Below the pieces are notes generated by a model that did not search any database, had not been told where the DNA came from, and saw only the letters and a program-made list of their open reading frames with translations. A DNA stretch of 63,807 nt, filler included, from Octopus bimaculoides (taxonomy: Eukaryota): NCBI RefSeq assembly GCF_001194135.2. It is 6 parts of 6 records of this genome, joined end to end, with 100 filler letters (N's around TTAATTAATTAA, not from the genome) between each part and the next. Parts side by side here need not be neighbours in the genome. Positions count along the whole stretch, not along the records: positions 46,843 to 58,562 come from NC_068985.1; 5 more parts are not named here. The stretch is one strand, 5' to 3'. Position 1 is the first letter of the stretch. Every line of letters starts with the position of its first letter. The position numbers and the translations under genes are program-made. This document shows positions 46,843 to 58,562 of the stretch, in pieces.

Positions 46843-47517
46843 GGAAACAGGTTGTTATTTTCCAGGTGCTTACTCAATCTCAGCGATATTATTGCAGTAA
46901 AGGCTTTGTAGATCGTAGGGAGACAGGTTATAGGTCTATAGTTTTGTGGTTTCTCCGTTTCCGTGGATTTGGGAATTAAGATGGTTCTCCCTTTCGTGAA
47001 CCATTCAGGCATTGTCTCTGGCTCTGCTAGTATGTTGTTAAAGTTTTCTGCCAGTTTTTATGCATTCCTGGTAGGTATTTTAACCAGAAGTTGGGGATCT
47101 TGTCGTGTCCAGGTGCCTTCCAGTTGCTTAGTCTTTGCAGTGTCTGGGTGACCTCTTCAGTTGTTACAGGGGCCCAGAGTTGCTCAGGTGCTAAGTTCGT
47201 TGTTTTAATGGTCCTTTTCTGGGGTTGTTGCTTCACCGACCATATTTGTTTCCAGAATTCTTCCAGTTCTTCTGCTGTTGGTGCTGCAGTAATGTCTATT
47301 TTATTTTTACCCAGTTCTTGGTAGAGTTTTTTGGGGGTTGGATTTGAACCGTTTGTTTTGTTCAAAGACACGTTCGCGTTTCTCATACCGGCAGATCCTT
47401 TGTGCTTTGGCAAGGATATCTTGCTTTAGTTTTTCTTTTGCCTCAGGTAAGTCTTTTTCTGTAATGCTGTATTTGTACAGTATTTTTGTTTTCTTCTTGT
47501 TACTTAGTTGTGTTTTT
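46843..47517 (-). mobile_element. R4/Dong-like LINE fragment (pre-RT and RT N-terminus), cut by a gap
   Basis: KKLYQELGK...EELEEFWKQIW...LSNWKAPGHDKIPNFWLK...PEWFTKGRTILIPKSTETEKPQNYRPITCLPTIYK. The 5' junction is in (TAA)n. Confidence 0.9.
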
Positions 47518-47540
47518 ATTATTATTATTAATATTATTAA

Positions 47541-47630
<90 letters not shown>

Positions 47631-47869: not shown

Positions 47870-50634
47870 GTTGTACAACACGGAAATATAAAATGAAAAG
47901 GTTTTCTGTGAACAGTACTTGTCAGCAGAATCTTTCGGATTTCTCTATGACATGGTCCTCAGCTATATTTTTATAGCTATATTTTTATCAGCGGGAACAC
48001 TTACATCTATTAGTATACCAGTATTTTCCTCCCTGTCTTTAACGATTATGTCTGGTCAATTAGCTTGGGTCATTCTGTCGGTGTTGACTGGAAAATCCTA
48101 GAGGATAGTGACATTTTTACCTCCAGCGACTGGCTTATGATGACGTTCATACCAGTAAGCAGGAATGCCGATTTTGTAGTGTCTACATATTTTCCAATTA
48201 AAACCTGTCCTACCATATCGTGGCGGTTTTTGTATTCATTTGGTGTCAGTACAGGACATCCCGAGACGCGATGGTGTATTGTTTCCTCAAATGTGTTGCA
48301 GAATCTGCATTTAGAGTAAGAACCGTTTTGAGGAACGTTAGCCTGGTAGTTTCTGGTAACCCAGCTTTGATCATGTGCCGCCAATAGGAAACATTCAGTA
48401 TCTGCTTTTCGTCTTGAGCTTCTCATCCGCTGATGCGTTGTTGCTTGGCCTACGTAAGCATTTCGACTTCGAAGAATATACTGTCCACGAGTAGATTCTA
48501 GCTCCACCTCACCCCAGTTTCTTTCTGCCCGTTCTTTTTGTAGTCTGCTTTATCCGTTTTGCTTGTTCGGTGACAGGGATTTCAGGTTCTTCATCTAATT
48601 CAAGGTTAATGCCAAGTTCCCTTGCGAATTCGCAAGCTCCCTTGACAATAGCATGTGACATTTTGCTGCTTTCTCTTTGCACACAAGCCGCAGCATCCAG
48701 TCCTCTATACTAGATAAGTACCTGATCATTGCTATTATAGAGTTGTTATAGTACAGTTCTACCTGCATCATCCTTTCCCCCCCCCATTACTTCTAGGTAG
48801 ATACAGACGATCAACCTCTGCTTTTGAATGATGCATGTTCTTAGACATTAGTAGTTTCCTTATCTTCCTGTCTAGGCGTTGAAGTTCCGTAGCATTCCAG
48901 TTAATGATTGGACTGTATTGGACTACTGGAAAGATCTTATATATCTCAAGGGTATTCAGTTATGGGGGACAGTAATGAATGCTTTCCTGTAGTCTGTCCA
49001 TGCCATACTCAGGTTCGTCTTTTTGCTCCGGTAATTCTCTGTAATCCTTTTATTTATGAGTAATTGATCTTTGCAGCTATATGAATTTCTTTTACAACCT
49101 TTTTGAGCTAGTGGAAAGATTGAGTTCTATTCATGTAAAGCGTATATTCTGTCAGTTAATATGGATGTGAGGATCTTGTAGGTGGTGTTGAGACATGTTA
49201 TGGGTCGGTAATTCTTCGGAATTTCTGTGTCTTCAGTTTTTCTAAGAAAGTATGTTATTCTTCCAGTCAGCCAGGCAGGTGTTTGCTCTAGGATCTGGAT
49301 GACACCAGTCAGAGATGCAGCGAAATGTTGGTGTACTTCTGTCAAACAATTCAGCCAGAATTTAGGGATCCGGTCAAATCCTAGGGTTTTCCATTTATGA
49401 GACTTTCTAAGAACACATCTTAGCTCTTTTATTCCTATTGCCTTCCATTTCTGCTCTTCAACTTCATCCAGTTTCACTTTCTCACGCTCTATCCAGTCAG
49501 TTTCAGCATTATATCCTTTTTTTTTGTTGCTCTATATCTTCTTCCAGAACTCTTCTATTTCCTCAGGCTTAGGTGGCTCCTTGACTTCTATCTTACTTTT
49601 GCCAATTTCCCTTAATAATTTCTTAGCATCCGTCTTGAATACTTTGTTTTCTCGATAAAATTTGATTCTTTTATCATACCTTCTACATCATTGAGCCTTC
49701 GCTGTTTCAACAGTCCTTTGCTTGCAGGGAAGTTTATAAAATTTTTGACTTTATATTTTTGCTTGATATTTTGCTCAATATTTACTATCTCTAGTTCATC
49801 GAGAACTGATACATCCGCCCGCAGAGATTCAATCTCTTTTTGTATTGCTGCTTTCCACTTAGGAAGTTTTTTTATATGATTGGTCCTTTTCCGTGTCGTC
49901 CTGATACATAGTTGAGCAGTTACAACTTTACCAGTGGACTAGATGTGGTTATTTAAGGTTGTTAGGTCATTTCTCTTATTTCTTAAGATCTAAGAGCAAC
50001 GTTATACATCATGATTATGTTTCTCCATAATCTGTATGTTTGTATAATGAGGTTATTGTCTGGGTTTAGTTGGGCTGTATAGAAAGCTTTCAAAACATCT
50101 CTGTAATCCTCTCTAGTATATTTTATGCGTTTTTCTTTAGGTGGTGTTTTTGGTGGCTTCACTGCCTGTCGAGGGCTAGGGTTATCCTAGTTCTGGCTAC
50201 CTGGTAGTTTTTTCTTTTTTTTTTTGGAAGTTTGTTCCAGCAGCAGACTTTTTGACCTCAGTCTGCTTCCCCACTGGGTAACGCGCTCCTTGTTATCCCG
50301 AGCGATGACGGATCCGGCATGAGATTTTGCTTGTCATTAAAACATTGACGGTGACATTAGGAGACGGGTTTTTTTTGTTTAGAGTTGACTTTTTTGACAT
50401 GACATCGTTTTTGTTTTCTTCGAATGGATATATTTATCGTATAGTAGTTGCATGAAACTAATAGATCAGCATTCGGCTCTAATTTTTTTGATAGCTATGT
50501 TTCTGGGCATAAATCTTTAGTGATGTTTTAATCTGAGTGACTCATTTGCTTCTTTTATCAGAGTGACTAATTTGCTCCTTTGTGGAAAGTCGCTTTGTTT
50601 TTGTTTCGATTTCCGTCGCTTGTAACACGTGTTT
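47870..50634 (-). mobile_element. Near full-length R4/Dong-like LINE with internal RT deletion
   Basis: N-terminal region, RT start (PKNYRPITCLNTTYKILT...AWTDYRKAF), thumb region, CCHC knuckle (KCRFCNTFEETIHHRVSGC) and REL remnants, in that order. QGD and YxDD motifs are missing at a junction near 48930. Confidence 0.85.
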
Positions 50635-50672
50635 TATTATTATTATCATTACTATTATTATTGTTGTTTTTG

Positions 50673-50789
<117 letters not shown>

Positions 50790-50796
50790 CATTATT

Positions 50797-51357
50797 ACTG
50801 AGAGAGCAGCACATGTCATCAAGGTGACACTGAGATATAAATACACGAAGCCCAATGTACCCATCATGAATACCCCCTCAGATAAAGCTACACTAGGCAC
50901 ATGCATCACAACCATATGTGCGCAACATTGTGATTTCCTTAACAAGATAAATAGCGCTGGACTTTGCAGGTGGGGCCCAGTTAGAATTTCCTTCAGCTCG
51001 AGTAGCCCATCCCGCACAAAAGGTCCCTGAATAAGGTTTGTTTAAGAATGTTGAACGAAACACCCATGTTTCCAGAGGTGAATTATTCAAACCCCAAAGA
51101 ATTCCTTTCAACAAATGGCTTTGATGCGCACCCCTGCCAACTATTTCTACTCATGATTAGAGATGCACATATTGTCAGCCAAGGGACATGGCTAAATGGT
51201 AAAAGTCAAGCAAGTGAGAAGCAAATCTGTGGTATTCAGTAGAATATTTGCTGTAGCCCATCTTTTATACCAAGACAAAACAAGTACATGATAACACTTC
51301 CAATCAGTTAAGATCAGAGGCCATGAAAGCCACTGCCTGGCACTGCATCAGAGCATA
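50797..51357 (+). mobile_element. Interspersed repeat, SINE-like (family E)
   Basis: gagagagcagcacatgtcatcaaggtgacactg...gcaggtggggcccagttagaattt...gcactgcatcagagcat between (ATT)n tracts. I recognise it as a recurrent octopus repeat, but there is only one copy in this window. Confidence 0.5.

Positions 51358-51599: not shown

Positions 51600-51600
<1 letters not shown>
51400..51600 (+). mobile_element. SINE family B, two partial copies
   Basis: aaggcggtgagcttgcaaaattgttggcac...; taaattaagcaccagtgaaacactggggtcaatgtaatcgac...aaaatttgaaac. Confidence 0.7.
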
Positions 51601-51656
<56 letters not shown>

Positions 51657-51680
51657 GTCGTTATCATTATTATATTCCAG

Positions 51681-53245: not shown

Positions 53246-54096
53246 NNNNNNNNNNNNNNNNNNNNNNNNNNNNNNNNNNNNNNNNNNNNNNNNNNNNNNN
53301 NNNNNNNNNNNNNNNNNNNNNNNNNNNNNNNNNNNNNNNNNNNNNNNNNNNNNNNNNNNNNNNNNNNNNNNNNNNNNNNNNNNNNNNNNNNNNNNNNNNN
53401 NNNNNNNNNNNNNNNNNNNNNNNNNNNNNNNNNNNNNNNNNNNNNNNNNNNNNNNNNNNNNNNNNNNNNNNNNNNNNNNNNNNNNNNNNNNNNNNNNNNN
53501 NNNNNNNNNNNNNNNNNNNNNNNNNNNNNNNNNNNNNNNNNNNNNNNNNNNNNNNNNNNNNNNNNNNNNNNNNNNNNNNNNNNNNNNNNNNNNNNNNNNN
53601 NNNNNNNNNNNNNNNNNNNNNNNNNNNNNNNNNNNNNNNNNNNNNNNNNNNNNNNNNNNNNATACATATATATATATATATAAACATAATCATAAATATG
53701 GGTTGTTATATCAATGGTCCAGTCTTATCAATCGATCAGATGATCGACTGAAAATATGGGTACTATTACCGACAGGTAATTATCTTCAGAGCCAAAACAA
53801 CTCAACTTCCTGGTATAGTAATCCCTTATTAATCCTTCTTTGTTCACATGTGCATATATATAATCTCTATTTCAAGCTTTGATTCGATACTCACTACCAT
53901 GATTTCAAACCACCCTGTTATTTAAATGCTTATTATTCATTTATACTTGGCAAAAATCTCGAAGCTTGTTCCGGTCTAGAATTTATTACATTAACCTTGA
54001 ATGCAAAAATCTAGTAAAATTCTTCTAAACACAGATCACATTTTGGGGTTCCAGATCTGTATGGTTTTGCAGAACAAATCATTAGTCAATACTTAT

Positions 54097-54784: not shown

Positions 54785-57192
54785 TTTAAATTATTGTAAT
54801 TTCGTATTTTCTTAAGAAGATTTTAGTCCATGTTGTGTGTGGAGAAGTTTGTGAATGAATGATACAAGAAGTAGAAAAATCTAAGTGGAGGTAATCGGCG
54901 ATCGTTATTATTGGGGACAGGGGAGGTAATTGTTCNNNNNNNNNNNNNNNNNNNNNNNNNNNNNNNNNNNNNNNNNNNNNNNNNNNNNNNNNNNNNNNNN
55001 NNNNNNNNNNNNNNNNNNNNNNNNNNNNNNNNNNNNNNNNNNNNNNNNNNNNNNNNNNNNNNNNNNNNNNNNNNNNNNNNNNNNNNNNNNNNNNNNNNNN
55101 NNNNNNNNNNNNNNNNNNNNNNNNNNNNNNNNNNNNNNNNNNNNNNNNNNNNNNNNNNNNNNNNNNNNNNNNNNNNNNNNNNNNNNNNNNNNNNNNNNNN
55201 NNNNNNNNNNNNNNNNNNNNNNNNNNNNNNNNNNNNNNNNNNNNNNNNNNNNNNNNNNNNNNNNNNNNNNNNNNNNNNNNNNNNNNNNNNNNNNNNNNNN
55301 NNAATGAGATGGAATATTTACAATGATGGGTATGTGATCATGAATTAAAATATATACTGAGACCAAAGTTGGTTATGCGATCATATTTAGTCGTGTTCTG
55401 TATTTTTTGATGAACTAATTTTCTTTATTTAAACTTTATTGTACAGAAATTGATTCTTTGCACTGGTAGACGGTGAAACTGTGAAGTTTGGTTGGATATT
55501 ACCTGCACATCTCTCTATGTGTTCACTCAAAGGAATCTGGTTGTATTGCGGGAACCGTAGCTGTTCCTTATGTGGTGTGGTTTTCCGTCTCAGTGTCATA
55601 CTCGTCTGTCCTGTATAGTGATGACCACAAGACGAACAGCTTATAACATAAATTAGTTTCTCAGAAGTACAAGTGAAGTTGGTTTTAATCGTGAACCTCT
55701 CTCCTGGCTTGAATAGGAATTCAGAGGCTTCCAATAGGTTGGGGTATGTTCCACAGTTTGGGCATCCACATTTTTTAACCGTTGATTTCGTGGTTGTTGT
55801 GTAAAGGTTCGCATTTGTTAGAGGTCTTTTCAGCGATTTGTGTTGCTTTTTGCATTTGATGAATTTGTTTTCAGAATGTTATTCATTTTGGCATAGGTAG
55901 GTTTTGTACAAGAGTGTTGTATGCCTCATTGTTTCTAGGGTCGTGAGTTGATATATACGGTAGTGTTTTGATATGAAAAGTGGTGTTGCGCTTCGTTACC
56001 CTTAGTGTTTTAATGCCTAATTTCTTAGCACGCTTACTTCCATCGTCCATAAGTGAGGGTGGATATTGTCTTTCAGTTAGTACTGTTCTGAGGTCTTGAA
56101 GACGAAGGTCCCGAGTATTTCCATCAGACACTATTGTGCAAGTCCTTTTTGCTACATTAAAGGGGACATTTCTTTTGGTGTGTTTCGGATGGCATGAGCT
56201 AAACAGGAGACATTGATTCGAGTCCGTTGGTTTATGAGAAATGTCATAGGGAGCTGTTCTTTGCTATATTGAATTGTAAATTGAATGTTAGGGATTATAT
56301 TAGTTAGTATTGATTTAAATTCCAACAGTTTATCAAAGGTTTCCTTCTAAATGATAAAGTAGTCATCCAGGTATTTTTTCCATATTTTTGCTATGACACT
56401 TCATATATGGTGAATTCAAAATATCCCTTTATTAGGTTCGCAAGTACAGAGGCTGCTTTCGTTCCCATCGCAATTCCACATTTTTTACGATAGTAGATGT
56501 CACCAAATAGGAAATAATTCTTCTGAAGTATAAATTTTAAAGTTTCAATAATAAAAACCTGGTTTATGCGTTCCAGAAGTACTTCGGGATACTTTTCCAG
56601 TCAAAGTTTTATTGCTTCTATTTCATAGTCATATGGGATGTTGGTGTAAAGATTAAATTAACAGCATCGAAGGAAACCAATAATGTCTCTTCATTAGTTG
56701 TTTTTGGTAGGTGCTTAAGCATGTCTGAATCATCTCTAACGAACCTTTTGATATATTTCAGCAAGTATTTCAGTAGGATGTCTAGAAAATTGCACAGGCT
56801 GGGCTAGCTATAATGGGTCTTAACTTTAAATCTTTTGGCGCTAAGCTTTTTATGTATTTGCCTGGTAATTGTTTGCAGGCTTCATTAATCATCTTGCTCT
56901 TGAGTATTTTAGGTAGGCCGTAAAAAACATTAGGTTTACATTTAACGTTTGTGATGTAATCTATTTCTTTTTCTGTGGGGCCTTTTCCATGTAGATGAAT
57001 TAAGGATGCAACATTTTTCATTGTATTTTGTTGTTTATAGTTTACAGCTTTTCCGCAGAAGGTATCGTTTTCTAGCATGGATAATATTAGGTTTTTGTAG
57101 TACTCTGTGTCCATCAGAACTATAGTACTTCTTTTGTCTGCTTCTTTAATTGTCAATTCTTAGTCGTTTTGTAGCTCAATTAGATTTTTCCA

Positions 57193-57609
57193 ATGAAGTA
57201 CTTGTATGCTGTCAACTTAATGTGACAGTCCCCTGAAGGGAATAGTACTACTGTTGGTTAGACCTAGGAAGCTGCACCGCTTCCTGTCGGCCTTGACACA
57301 TTTCCTGTGTCCTTATGTTTACAAGAGGCAGACAAGTACCTCCACCCAGCTAAGCCTGCATCCAGAGACATGTTTCTGAGTGTTTGCTCGTCATTAGTCT
57401 GGAGTAGCATGACCTGCTTGTCTCCCTCTTGTAAACAAGGACACAGGAAATGTGTCAAGGCCGACAGGAAGCGATGCAGCTTCCTAGGTCTAACCAACAG
57501 TAGTATTATTCTTTTCAGCGGACAGTCACATTAAGTTGACAGCATACAACTACTTCATCGTATCACTACTGCATAAATCTCTCTGAGAGATTTAGAAATG
57601 TATTATTTC
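57193..57609 (+). mobile_element. 417-bp fold-back insertion with a 12-bp target-site duplication, inside the PLE ORF
   Basis: TAGATTTTTCCA at 57181-57192 and 57610-57621. Inverted arms at 57193-57338 and 57415-57558 differ by 9 substitutions and one 2-nt indel. Removing the insertion restores the PLE frame. The strand is inferred from an AT-rich tail only. Confidence 0.9.
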
Positions 57610-58529
57610 TAGATTTTTCCATTCGAGATTGTTGAGGTTTGAATTAATTTTTCGCTGATGGAAAGTATTTGAGAAATTTTGAATATGGTCGCAGAAGTTA
57701 ACTGTTTTATTCCTAACTTTAAGCGGAAGATAATTGCTTCTGTTTTTCATTAGTGATTCATCCTCATTGCTGTAGTTAATTAGCGCTTCTGTGAGTCGTA
57801 GTTTTCTTCAGAATTCCAAAATATTGTCTTTAATTCCATTCTGGTTAGATCTTCGTGGGGTTCGGATAAATTTTAATCCCTTAATTAGTATACTGATTTT
57901 TGTTGCAGAGATAGTTTTCATTGATAAATTCATTACTTTGGGTTTCTCCTGTATGTTTTGTTCCAACGTGTGCCCCTGTTTCTCTAGACTCGGTCTAAAA
58001 GATGTTTACTGTAATTTGATTGGTAGAATTATCAGTGCTCTTAATTATATTAGGATTGCTGGGAGCCTGATTTTGCTATCTGGGTAAATTGGTTGGAAAT
58101 ATATAGTTCGGGTTTCTTCGTTGGTATAAATTATCGGGGTTCATAATTATGTTTGAGATGCTGAGGGGTTGGTTTTGCTGTCTGGGTAAATAGGTTGGAA
58201 TTCCGTTAGTCGAGTTTCTTCGATGAGGGGTAGAAGTCCCTTGGATCTTATTTGTTGGTGAGGAGAAATAATTACTCCTAAACCAAGGTTGGTTTCTTCT
58301 TGTATTTCATATTAGATTTAGAGTGGTTTACTTCCAAGCGAGAAATTAGTTTTGTGCGTTTGTGTACTTTAGATGTTTATAGATTGATCTAGTTGGACCT
58401 TTATTTCTGTAGATGTATTTGTTCTAGACACTTTCAGGAAGGGGTTATCTGAACTGTAGTCTCTTTAAAACGGAGTTTCGTAACTAAAGAACTGTGTGTG
58501 AGTGTACACTTACACACACACACACACAC

Positions 58530-58562
<33 letters not shown>

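What the first reader, a model, noticed from the sequence alone, without database searches (positions are those of the whole stretch)
57181..57621. 417-bp hairpin element with a 12-bp TSD: a possible retroposed fold-back RNA
Seen: a perfect direct repeat TAGATTTTTCCA (57181-57192, 57610-57621) brackets the insertion, and removing it restores the PLE reading EWKNL|IELQND*ELTIKEADK. The first 366 nt form one hairpin: arms of 146 and 144 bp, 9 mismatches plus a 2-nt indel, and a 76-nt loop with further pairing (tccaga/tctgga). Each arm also contains local stems (aggaagc/gcttcct, gacaca/tgtgtc). A 51-nt unpaired tail follows, containing a 10-bp palindrome (57574-57594) and ending tattatttc. There is no ORF, tRNA head or hammerhead. 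Established: variable 7-20-bp TSDs typify target-primed reverse transcription, whereas MITE TIRs reach both termini. Inference: a non-coding, almost fully double-stranded RNA mobilised in trans, a class I cannot name. A Mutator-like MITE with an extra tail is the main alternative. In a pre-mRNA it would be a strong ADAR/Dicer substrate.
Basis: partly seen in the sequence, partly recalled or inferred. Interest (0 to 1): 0.75.

Follow-up and report, generated by a model that had tools for sequence, protein, structure and literature searches.

The report
Head-to-head Penelope-like retroelement stub insertion
The 417-bp "hairpin" is most likely an ordinary footprint of a Penelope-like retrotransposon in an octopus genome: two truncated copies of the element's 3' end inserted head-to-head, one with an extra "tail", not a new kind of fold-back RNA or a MITE.

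Summary
A 417-bp insert (57193-57609) sits between perfect 12-bp repeats. Removing it restores the reading frame of a decayed octopus Penelope-like element (PLE), and related PLE copies read straight through the site. The inverted arms are 144 and 142 nt, and one end carries a 51-nt tail.

One reader statement is wrong. The loop holds a PLE-type minimal hammerhead motif on the minus strand (57403-57361), with one core substitution. No dinucleotide shuffle reproduced it (0 of 20,000), and it has the same layout as a hammerhead beside a PLE ORF in Octopus vulgaris.

Published PLE biology describes this anatomy: head-to-head 5'-truncated copies, a tail at one end only, short TSDs of differing length (8-10 bp reported), and a hammerhead upstream of the 3' end. 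The PLE protein nicks and extends both target strands, from two reverse-transcription start sites that delimit the tail.

Best reading (about 0.65): two cDNAs primed from the two nicks and joined head-to-head. The hairpin would then have formed at integration, not in the RNA.

The main gap is that I found no other copy or parent element; octopus genomes could not be searched at the DNA level. Interest is low.

The parts
57181..57192 (.). Left copy of the 12-bp target-site duplication TAGATTTTTCCA. On the minus strand it encodes W-K-N-L of the host PLE.
57610..57621 (.). Right copy of the 12-bp target-site duplication.
   Evidence: Homologous PLE proteins and DNA carry this segment only once.
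57193..57416 (-). Copy A: a 224-nt 5'-truncated 3' end of a PLE-type retroelement, sense on the minus strand. It holds the hammerhead motif and ends at 57193 (...GCATACAAGTACTTCAT-3') without a tail. 57193-57336 is the left arm of the hairpin.
   Evidence: Arms. Orientation is inferred from the hammerhead strand. The monomer RNA folds at -74.5 kcal/mol, z = -2.8, with hammerhead helices I and II in the MFE structure. The frame is open from 57416 to the TAG at 57264-57266.
57361..57403 (-). Minimal type-I hammerhead-like motif: UCCAGA-CUAAUGA-C-GAG-CAAACA-CUC-A-GAAA-CAUG-UC|UCUGGA. Helix I is 6 bp and helix II is 3 bp. Helix III is one A-U pair closed by the palindromic loop CAUG. Core position 5 is A instead of G, so this copy is probably inactive.
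   Evidence: It is the only descriptor hit in the piece. Shuffles gave 13 of 5000 with the loose descriptor and 0 of 20,000 with the strict one. The layout matches the canonical-core motif at L003 11175-11217, beside a PLE ORF end.
57417..57558 (+). Copy B: a 142-nt 5'-truncated copy of the same 3' end, sense on the plus strand. It forms the right arm of the hairpin.
   Evidence: 8 mismatches plus a 2-nt indel against the left arm.
57559..57609 (+). The 51-nt "tail": a 3' extension present on copy B only. I read it as the stretch between a proximal and a distal reverse-transcription start site.
   Evidence: for the sequence. The interpretation comes from PMC3846280, PMC8557442 and PMC11167929.
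57574..57594 (+). A perfect 10-bp stem with a 1-nt loop inside the tail, in A/C-rich surroundings. It may correspond to the stem-loop where PLE reverse transcription starts.
   Evidence: (I10). The comparison with the Anolis PLE is an inference.
55303..58504 (-). Host element: a decayed Penelope-like element with many stops and frameshifts. It has a GIY-YIG ORF at 55429-55734 and a DUF8422-type N-terminal region around the insertion site. Its upstream side abuts (TA)n/(TG)n microsatellites, and its downstream side is cut by an N gap.

Best explanation
The insert is a very short product of Penelope-like-element (PLE) retrotransposition. It landed inside an older, unrelated PLE in an octopus genome.

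**Proposed steps (all inferred; none observed here)**
1. A PLE reverse transcriptase/GIY-YIG endonuclease nicked both strands of an AT-rich target 12 bp apart. The top strand was cut at CCA^TTC and the bottom strand at CTA^ATT.
2. Each 3'-OH primed reverse transcription of the 3' region of a PLE RNA, or of a PLE-dependent non-autonomous RNA.
3. The top-strand primer started at the proximal internal start site. It copied 224 nt, running through the hammerhead (copy A, 57193-57416, sense on the minus strand).
4. The bottom-strand primer started at a distal start site 51 nt further 3'. It copied 51 + 142 nt (tail plus copy B, 57417-57609, sense on the plus strand).
5. The two 5'-truncated cDNAs were completed and joined head-to-head at 57416/57417.

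**What this accounts for**
- The two arms are the part of the RNA that both cDNAs copied.
- The "loop" is the extra 80 nt that only the longer cDNA copied.
- The "tail" is the stretch between the two start sites.
- The 12-bp TSD comes from the staggered nicks.

On this reading the hairpin is a DNA-level by-product of integration and not a property of the mobile RNA. The arms now differ by about 6%, which fits a few million years of neutral decay since insertion.

**Shown here:** the anatomy, the TSD and empty site, the hammerhead-like motif, and its strand.
**Inferred:** the two-sided priming, the two start sites, and the PLE origin of the arms.
For: **1. True 12-bp TSD and precise empty site.**

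**2. The inverted repeat starts at the first base of the insert but stops 51 nt short of the other end.** Nothing pairs with the tail. The PLE literature describes this asymmetry:
[quoted passage not shown] **3. Published mechanism.** Purified Anolis PLE protein cleaves and extends both strands. It starts reverse transcription at two internal sites, and the tail is the stretch between them (PMC11167929).

**4. Hammerhead-like motif in the loop, minus strand 57403-57361.**
- It is the only hit in the 11.7-kb piece.
- Loose descriptor: 13 of 5000 shuffles of the element gave a hit.
- Strict descriptor: 0 of 20,000 dinucleotide shuffles of the element and 0 of 1000 of the piece gave a hit.
- It shares its layout with a canonical-core motif overlapping a PLE ORF end in O. 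vulgaris (L003 11175-11217). The layout is an unpaired N, a 3-bp helix II, a 6-nt loop, A-GAAA, and a 1-bp helix III with a palindromic loop.
- It matches the published description of metazoan and PLE hammerheads (PMC4209133).

**5. Orientation and geometry fit.** The motif is in sense in the longer copy. Its cleavage site lies 174 nt upstream of the tail-less 3' end and 225 nt upstream of the tailed one. This is the same order, and a comparable distance, as in Anolis PAc.

**6. Reading frame.** The frame in which the L003 ORF reads through its hammerhead is also open in copy A for 50 codons. This is weak support, about p = 0.09 by chance.

**7. Target.** Both nicks sit at A^(A)TT in an AT-rich target. 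That is compatible with the ATT preference reported.

**8. PLE machinery is available.** PLEs are numerous and recently active in Octopus (PMC13282606), and the insert lies within a PLE.

**9. Arm mismatches look unconstrained.** The 8 mismatches are 4 transitions and 4 transversions, with no excess of pair-preserving changes.
Against: - **No other copy and no parent.** I found no full-length PLE carrying these arms. This includes 85 kb of sampled O. sinensis and O. vulgaris DNA and the rest of the piece, the protein databases searched with the element's ORFs, and the public metagenome, viral and prokaryote DNA scans. The PLE origin of the arms therefore rests on the hammerhead motif and the architecture alone.
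- **The hammerhead has A at essential core position G5 and a C-A opposition at 10.1/11.1.** Rfam does not report it even at E <= 10. Rfam also misses the canonical-core control in L003.
- **My strict descriptor was written after I had seen both motifs.**
- **The tail is 51 nt, longer than the published 30-40 nt.**
- **There is no palindrome or microhomology at the inverted junction 57416/57417.** Such palindromes are often seen in rotifer PLEs.
- **No reads could be laid,** so a mis-join inside the insert in this gapped short-read assembly cannot be excluded.
Confidence: 0.65

Rival explanations
1. The hairpin is intrinsic to the mobile unit. On this reading, an octopus family of hammerhead-bearing, non-autonomous retroelements (retrozyme-like) has an RNA that is itself a near-perfect 144-bp hairpin or rod. 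The 51-nt segment would be a terminal loop or a head. PLE reverse transcriptase would copy the RNA in trans as a whole 417-nt unit.
For: - The whole insert folds as one hairpin with z = -28.
- Metazoan retrozyme circular RNAs are small (about 170-400 nt), carry a hammerhead and depend on PLEs (PMC7229834; preprint 10.64898/2026.07.22.740005).
- In a circular form, the tail would close the rod at the end opposite the hammerhead loop.
- Three of the four transition differences between the arms would be G-U pairs in the plus-strand RNA.
Against: - Known retrozymes are tandem direct repeats with a hammerhead in every unit. They are not single inverted duplications at 94% complementarity.
- Four of the eight arm differences are transversions that break pairing.
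- A hammerhead in the apical loop of a perfect hairpin would cut the RNA into two paired halves.
- The one-sided tail and the repeat starting exactly at the insert's first base are already explained by documented PLE integration, with no need for a new RNA class.
- No second copy was found to show that the unit moves as a whole.
Confidence: 0.13
2. A non-autonomous DNA transposon: a Mutator-like or fold-back MITE with long inverted repeats that gained an extra 51 bp at one end.
For: - Long, near-perfect inverted repeats.
- A perfect TSD.
- Mutator-family and MITE families are annotated in O. vulgaris.
Against: - The inverted repeat does not reach the right terminus, and nothing in the first 51 nt complements the tail.
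- From general knowledge, 12 bp is longer than the 8-11 bp of MULEs and longer than the TSD of any other cut-and-paste superfamily.
- A sense-oriented PLE-type hammerhead lies in the unique middle part.
Confidence: 0.07
3. A SINE- or LINE-type insertion. The 51-nt stem-loop tail would be a LINE-derived 3' recognition module, and the inverted arm would come from twin priming or snap-back by a LINE reverse transcriptase rather than a PLE one.
For: - The 12-bp TSD is typical of target-primed reverse transcription.
- The tail holds a stem-loop followed by a short unstructured end, as in stringent-type LINE/SINE tails (general knowledge).
- LINE fragments lie in the same piece.
Against: - There is no tRNA, 5S or 7SL head.
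- The tail has no similarity to any LINE sequence in the piece or in the sampled loci.
- The hammerhead motif points to PLEs.
- Twin priming gives adjacent segments, not widely overlapping ones. It also does not explain why one arm stops exactly where the tail begins.
Confidence: 0.07
4. An assembly artefact, or a collapsed larger structure. PLE inverted and tandem structures are known to mis-assemble, so the true insert could be longer, for example a full PLE lying between the inverted ends.
For: - The piece is a gapped scaffold, with N runs at 53246-53661 and 54936-55302.
- PMC8557442 warns that such PLE structures cause problems in short-read assemblies.
Against: - Both outer junctions are validated by the perfect TSD and the restored host frame.
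- The arms differ at 8 sites plus an indel, so they are not one sequence used twice.
- There is no gap inside the insert.
- Even if the interior were collapsed, the PLE interpretation would stand.
Confidence: 0.05

Closest known systems
Penelope-like element insertions with inverted pseudo-LTRs and a one-sided tail (Penelope/Poseidon, Neptune, Naiad; Arkhipova and colleagues; Frangieh et al. 2024)
   Same: - Head-to-head arrangement of 5'-truncated copies.
- An optional extension at the 3' end of only one copy.
- A short TSD whose length varies between insertions.
- An AT-rich target.
- A sense hammerhead motif upstream of the 3' end.
- Insertion into another PLE.
   Different: - Both copies here are extremely short (224 and 142 nt), with no ORF or full pseudo-LTR pair, so the result mimics a MITE or a hairpin-RNA locus.
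- The tail is 51 nt rather than 30-40.
- The hammerhead has A at core position 5.
- The autonomous parent has not been identified.
Metazoan non-LTR retrozymes (Cervera and de la Pena 2020; Li, Clavereau and Pollet 2026 preprint)
   Same: - Small, non-coding, low-GC elements with a type-I hammerhead.
- Thought to derive from PLE pseudo-LTRs and to be mobilised by PLEs.
- TSDs longer than 4 bp.
   Different: - Retrozymes are tandem direct repeats with one hammerhead per unit, and they are expressed as circular RNAs.
- This locus has one hammerhead and an inverted, not tandem, duplication.
- Expression could not be tested.
5'-inverted L1 insertions made by twin priming
   Same: Both target strands prime cDNA synthesis, which gives an inverted 5' segment joined to a direct 3' segment within one TSD.
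   Different: - L1 twin-priming segments are essentially adjacent along the RNA, with small overlaps or deletions. They do not form 142-nt overlapping arms.
- L1 has no second, internal start site that produces a tail.
- L1 has no hammerhead.
MITEs and fold-back elements with long terminal inverted repeats
   Same: Small size, no coding capacity, and a long near-perfect hairpin when single-stranded.
   Different: - The inverted repeat is missing at one terminus.
- The TSD is 12 bp.
- The unique centre carries a retroelement ribozyme motif.

Membership tests
Penelope-like element (PLE) insertion unit | Inverted 5'-truncated copy adjacent to a direct copy, head-to-head, with 3' ends pointing outwards | tested here: met
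   Arms 57193-57336 and 57417-57558 are 94% complementary. One copy extends 80 nt further inwards. The feature is defined in PMC8557442 and PMC3846280.
Penelope-like element (PLE) insertion unit | Optional 30-40-bp tail at the 3' end of only one of the copies | tested here: met
   The 51-nt extension 57559-57609 is on the right copy only, and nothing complements it at the left end. It is somewhat longer than the published range.
Penelope-like element (PLE) insertion unit | Short TSD whose length varies between insertions | tested here: inconclusive
   One exact 12-bp TSD was verified against homologues. Published examples are 8-10 bp. Variation among copies cannot be judged from a single copy.
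Penelope-like element (PLE) insertion unit | Minimal type-I hammerhead motif in sense orientation in the terminal repeat region | tested here: met
   Motif at 57403-57361 on the minus strand, with 0 of 20,000 shuffles giving a hit. It has the same layout as the L003 control. Caveats: the core has a G5-to-A change, and Rfam reports neither this motif nor the control.
Penelope-like element (PLE) insertion unit | Sequence continuity with a full-length element encoding a PLE-type RT and a GIY-YIG endonuclease | not testable with these tools
   No octopus genome could be searched at the DNA level. There were no matches in 85 kb of sampled loci or in the protein databases.
Metazoan non-LTR retrozyme | Tandem direct repeats of about 170-400-nt monomers, each with a type-I hammerhead | tested here: not met
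   The insert has a single hammerhead motif and an inverted duplication, not a tandem one.
Metazoan non-LTR retrozyme | Expression as small circular RNAs | not testable with these tools
MITE / Mutator-like non-autonomous DNA transposon | Terminal inverted repeats at both termini | tested here: not met
   The right terminus (the 51-nt tail) has no complement at the left terminus.
MITE / Mutator-like non-autonomous DNA transposon | Fixed TSD length typical of the superfamily (8-11 bp for MULEs) | tested here: not met
   The TSD is exactly 12 bp with unambiguous boundaries. The superfamily ranges are from general knowledge.
SINE | Pol III-type head derived from tRNA, 5S or 7SL | tested here: not met
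   ARAGORN found no tRNA. Rfam gave no match at E <= 1.
SINE | 3' tail shared with a partner LINE | tested here: inconclusive
   The tail has no similarity to LINE fragments in the piece or the sampled loci. Only a few LINE sequences were available.

The most novel reading that the evidence does not exclude
The 417-nt unit may be the mobile form of an undescribed cephalopod family of hammerhead-bearing, almost fully double-stranded non-autonomous retroelements. These would be copied in trans by PLE reverse transcriptase and would seed long dsRNA hairpins in a lineage known for massive ADAR editing.
Probability: 0.12. Interest if true: 0.6.

Novelty: new member of a known kind. Interest (0 to 1): 0.22.

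Why it matters
**For mechanism.** If the reading is right, this is a compact natural example, in a mollusc, of behaviour shown in vitro for an Anolis PLE in 2024: priming from both target strands, and two internal reverse-transcription start sites that generate the "tail". The ends, tail length, TSD and junction of both cDNAs can all be read within one 441-bp stretch.

**For annotation.** Such mini-insertions look like MITEs or hairpin-RNA loci and will be misclassified by MITE finders. Rfam also misses the PLE-type hammerheads in octopus; it missed both this motif and a canonical-core control.

**Possible but untested.** Octopus genomes hold many PLEs. If head-to-head stubs like this one are common, they could be a steady source of long perfect dsRNA when transcribed, and so of ADAR or RNAi substrates. 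Nothing here tests that.

Tried and rejected
**Searches for other copies or the parent element**
- Rest of the piece and five fetched loci (L001-L005, 85 kb; four octopus loci plus one 1-kb TARA contig): none found.
- Exact-pattern scans with three conserved arm segments against metagenome, viral and prokaryote collections: none found. These collections are unlikely to hold cephalopod DNA.
- Protein-level search with the element's longest ORFs, hoping that ORFs had been called on other copies. The word-indexed search found nothing. The HMMER search of 1.8 billion representatives gave only two low-complexity repeat proteins, which are spurious.
- Exact look-up of the flanking window ORF: not on record.
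- Third protein search, using the L003 PLE C-terminal gene to reach related octopus PLE 3' ends: mostly bivalve and metagenome PLEs plus one O. sinensis orthologue, so no parent was found.

**Tests of the hammerhead motif**
- Rfam on the region and, with lax settings, on the loop alone: no hammerhead. This is uninformative, because the canonical-core control in L003 is also missed.
- A covariance model built from the single L003 hammerhead was too sequence-specific. It missed both this motif and the L001 control, so it says nothing either way.

**Ideas considered and dropped**
- Local alignment of the insert against the 3' region of the L003 PLE: chance level. The shared ACTTCAT is not significant.
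- Helitron reading (3' hairpin plus CTAG): rejected, because there is a true 12-bp TSD and no 5' TC end.
- Inverted repeats in the sampled octopus loci as local precedents: mostly microsatellite noise. One real 200-bp pair was not resolved.
Full report
**1. Observation**

- TAGATTTTTCCA occurs at 57181-57192 and again at 57610-57621, and brackets a 417-bp insert.
- The insert opens with an inverted repeat. The arms are 57193-57336 and 57417-57558 (144 and 142 nt), with 8 mismatches and one 2-nt indel.
- The arms enclose 80 unique nucleotides and are followed by 51 nt that pair with nothing at the other end.
- Either strand folds at about -275 kcal/mol, z = -28.
- The local stems and the 10-bp palindrome in the tail are real.
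- The insert is richer in G+C than the piece around it, 44% against 35%.

The 12-bp repeat is a genuine target-site duplication.

- Deleting the insert and one repeat restores the minus-strand reading ...NNLEWKNLIELQND*ELTIKEADK of a decayed Penelope-like element (PLE).
- Seven homologous PLE proteins are colinear through this segment with no gap, and W and L are invariant.
- Two Octopus sinensis paralogues read straight through at DNA level: GAATGGAAAGACCTTGTCGAGC against GAATGGAAAAATCTAATTGAGC.
- The best protein matches are from Octopus sinensis, O. bimaculoides and O. vulgaris, so the host is an octopod.

**2.

Read on the minus strand, the loop is UCCAGA-CUAAUGA-C-GAG-CAAACA-CUC-A-GAAA-CAUG-UC|UCUGGA (57403-57361).

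- CUAAUGA is the CUGAUGA box with A at position 5.
- GAG/CUC is helix II, and GAAA follows it.
- Helix III is a single A-U pair closed by the palindrome CAUG.
- UC is the cleavage dinucleotide.

Cervera and de la Pena describe this architecture for metazoan and PLE hammerheads: a helix I of about 6 bp, and a 1-2-bp helix III capped by a small palindromic loop that works in dimers (PMC4209133).

How strong is the motif?

- A loose descriptor finds it as the only hit in the piece, and 13 of 5000 shuffles of the element give any hit.
- A stricter descriptor is modelled on a control motif that overlaps the end of a PLE ORF in O. vulgaris (L003 11175-11217: UGAAC-CUGAUGA-A-UGC-UUAAAU-GCA-A-GAAA-GUAUAC-UA-GUUCA). 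It finds only the control and this motif.
- With the strict descriptor, 0 of 20,000 dinucleotide shuffles of the element and 0 of 1000 shuffles of the piece give a hit. I wrote this descriptor after seeing both motifs, so the p-value is optimistic.
- A third PLE-type motif, with palindromic loop CAGCTG, lies 3' of a PLE gene in O. sinensis (L001 16094-16148).
- Rfam reports no hammerhead for this loop. It also misses the canonical-core L003 control, so that negative carries no weight.
- A single-sequence covariance model was likewise uninformative.
- G5 is catalytically essential, so this copy is probably inactive. In the Anolis system, hammerhead cleavage is not needed for insertion in vitro.

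**3. Comparison with what is known**

The PLE literature describes this anatomy.

- PLE insertions are strongly 5'-truncated. [quoted passage not shown] Hammerheads typically lie in the pseudo-LTRs (PMC8557442).
- Frangieh et al. 2024 showed that purified Anolis PLE protein cleaves and extends both target strands. It prefers AT-rich DNA with an ATT motif, and it starts reverse transcription at two adjacent internal sites in a stem-loop. The genomic tail is the stretch between those sites (PMC11167929).

**4. Model**

Mapped onto this insert:

- The top-strand 3'-OH (...TTTTTCCA-3') primed a cDNA from the proximal start site. This gave copy A (57193-57416, sense on the minus strand, 224 nt), which runs back through the hammerhead.
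- The bottom-strand 3'-OH (...AAAATCTA-3') primed a cDNA from a distal site 51 nt further 3'. This gave the tail plus copy B (57417-57609, sense on the plus strand, 193 nt).
- The two were joined head-to-head at 57416/57417.

Several observations fit this model.

- The inverted repeat begins at the very first base of the insert, but the other end has a tail.
- The "loop" is simply the extra length of the longer copy.
- The hammerhead is single and in sense.
- The TSD is 12 bp.
- Both nicks fall at A^(A)TT.
- The tail contains a perfect 10-bp stem-loop in A/C-rich surroundings, which recalls the stem-loop at the Anolis start sites. This is an inference.
- The single-copy RNA is only moderately structured, z = -2.8 and -2.25. 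The template need not have been a long hairpin.
- The frame in which the L003 ORF reads through its hammerhead (..SEPDECLNARKYTSSMKIDI*) is also open in copy A from its truncation point to a TAG that both arms share (QVMLLQTNDEQTLRNMSL...AAS*). This is weak support for copy A starting in the C-terminal coding end of a parent ORF.
- The arm differences are 4 transitions and 4 transversions, which shows no selection for pairing.

A rough age follows if the arms were identical at insertion. About 2.9% change per arm, on the clock implied by the O. vulgaris repeat paper (JC 0.09 for about 25 My), gives roughly 8 My. An intact TSD is compatible with that age.

**5. Limits**

- I could not find a second copy or the parent element.
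- Five fetched loci totalling 85 kb held no match.
- ORF-based protein searches were negative or spurious.
- The public DNA scans were negative.

The PLE origin of the arms therefore rests on the architecture and the hammerhead motif. It remains open whether the source was an autonomous PLE or a PLE-dependent non-autonomous (retrozyme-like) RNA. A mis-join inside the insert cannot be excluded without reads, although both outer junctions are secure.

**6. Rivals**

| Rival | Confidence | Main points |
|---|---|---|
| Intrinsically hairpin-shaped, hammerhead-bearing retroelement | about 0.13 | The most interesting alternative. It needs a new RNA class to explain what PLE integration already explains. 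|
| MITE or fold-back DNA transposon | about 0.07 | Fails the both-termini TIR test and the TSD-length test. |
| SINE/LINE origin with twin priming | about 0.07 | No Pol III head and no LINE match. Does not explain the tail boundary. |
| Assembly artefact | about 0.05 | Arms differ at 9 positions and the junctions are validated. |

**7. Verdict**

Retroposition by target-primed reverse transcription is supported. A fold-back RNA of an unnamed class is not.
- The most likely identity is a minimal head-to-head PLE insertion with a one-sided tail. That makes it a new member of a known kind.
- Interest is low. Its value is as a clean natural illustration of two-sided priming and dual start sites, and as a warning for MITE and hairpin-RNA annotation in cephalopod genomes.

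Noticed in passing
window 55411-55445 (minus strand): Right at the stop of the host PLE's GIY-YIG ORF lies a decayed relic of a hammerhead (UGUAC..AAUAAA.GUUUAAAUA.AAGAAAAU..UAGUUCA). It aligns with the L003 hammerhead, which sits at the same position of its ORF. This suggests that this octopus PLE lineage carries its hammerhead overlapping the ORF's 3' end.
   Followed up: partly
window 58505-58562: The upstream end of the host PLE abuts (TA)n and (TG)n microsatellites. This is in line with the microsatellite insertion bias reported for PLEs. The downstream side is cut by an N gap (54936-55302).
   Followed up: partly
L003 11175-11217 and L001 16094-16148: These are PLE-type minimal hammerheads with a canonical CUGAUGA core and palindromic loop III (GUAUAC, CAGCUG), in O. 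vulgaris and O. sinensis. Rfam 15 did not report the L003 motif even at E <= 10; the L001 motif was not scanned. In L003 the annotated ORF reads through the ribozyme.
   Followed up: partly
L001 8161-8209 (-), L001 22614-22663 (+), L003 18665-18713 (+): Three copies of a dispersed GC-rich repeat (GCCAGATYTGACTGGGCCTGATGAAGCCTTCYGGCTTCACAGACCCC...CCGTCCAACCCATGCTAGC). Each holds a CUGAUGA box followed by a stem-loop but no GAAA. It is probably an abundant octopus SINE and not a hammerhead.
   Followed up: no
L001 14102-14316 and 15010-15205: A pair of inverted repeats of about 200 bp and about 90% identity encloses 693 bp. The enclosed stretch encodes a GIY-YIG-like motif (VIYQCTVHNIVNYSNSYYIGSTTKFKQRY). 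No TSD is evident. It could be another PLE inverted structure, or two inverted repeats inserted into a PLE.
   Followed up: partly
window 47027-47413, 48070-48507, 49127-49477 (all minus strand): Fragments of non-LTR retrotransposon ORFs with weak RVT_1 and zf-RVT matches. They are separated by long (TTA)n arrays at 47516-47630, 50634-50797 and 51600-51673.
   Followed up: partly
window 51181-51293: A 113-bp stretch is 89% identical to L004 9718-9831, next to a PLE copy in O. sinensis. It is a dispersed repeat of unknown class.
   Followed up: no
window 58090-58260 (minus strand): The 5' region of the host PLE contains an internal duplication of about 100 nt. The translated segments are ..EETRLTEFQPIYPDSK.. 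and ..EETRTIYFQPIYPDSK..
   Followed up: no
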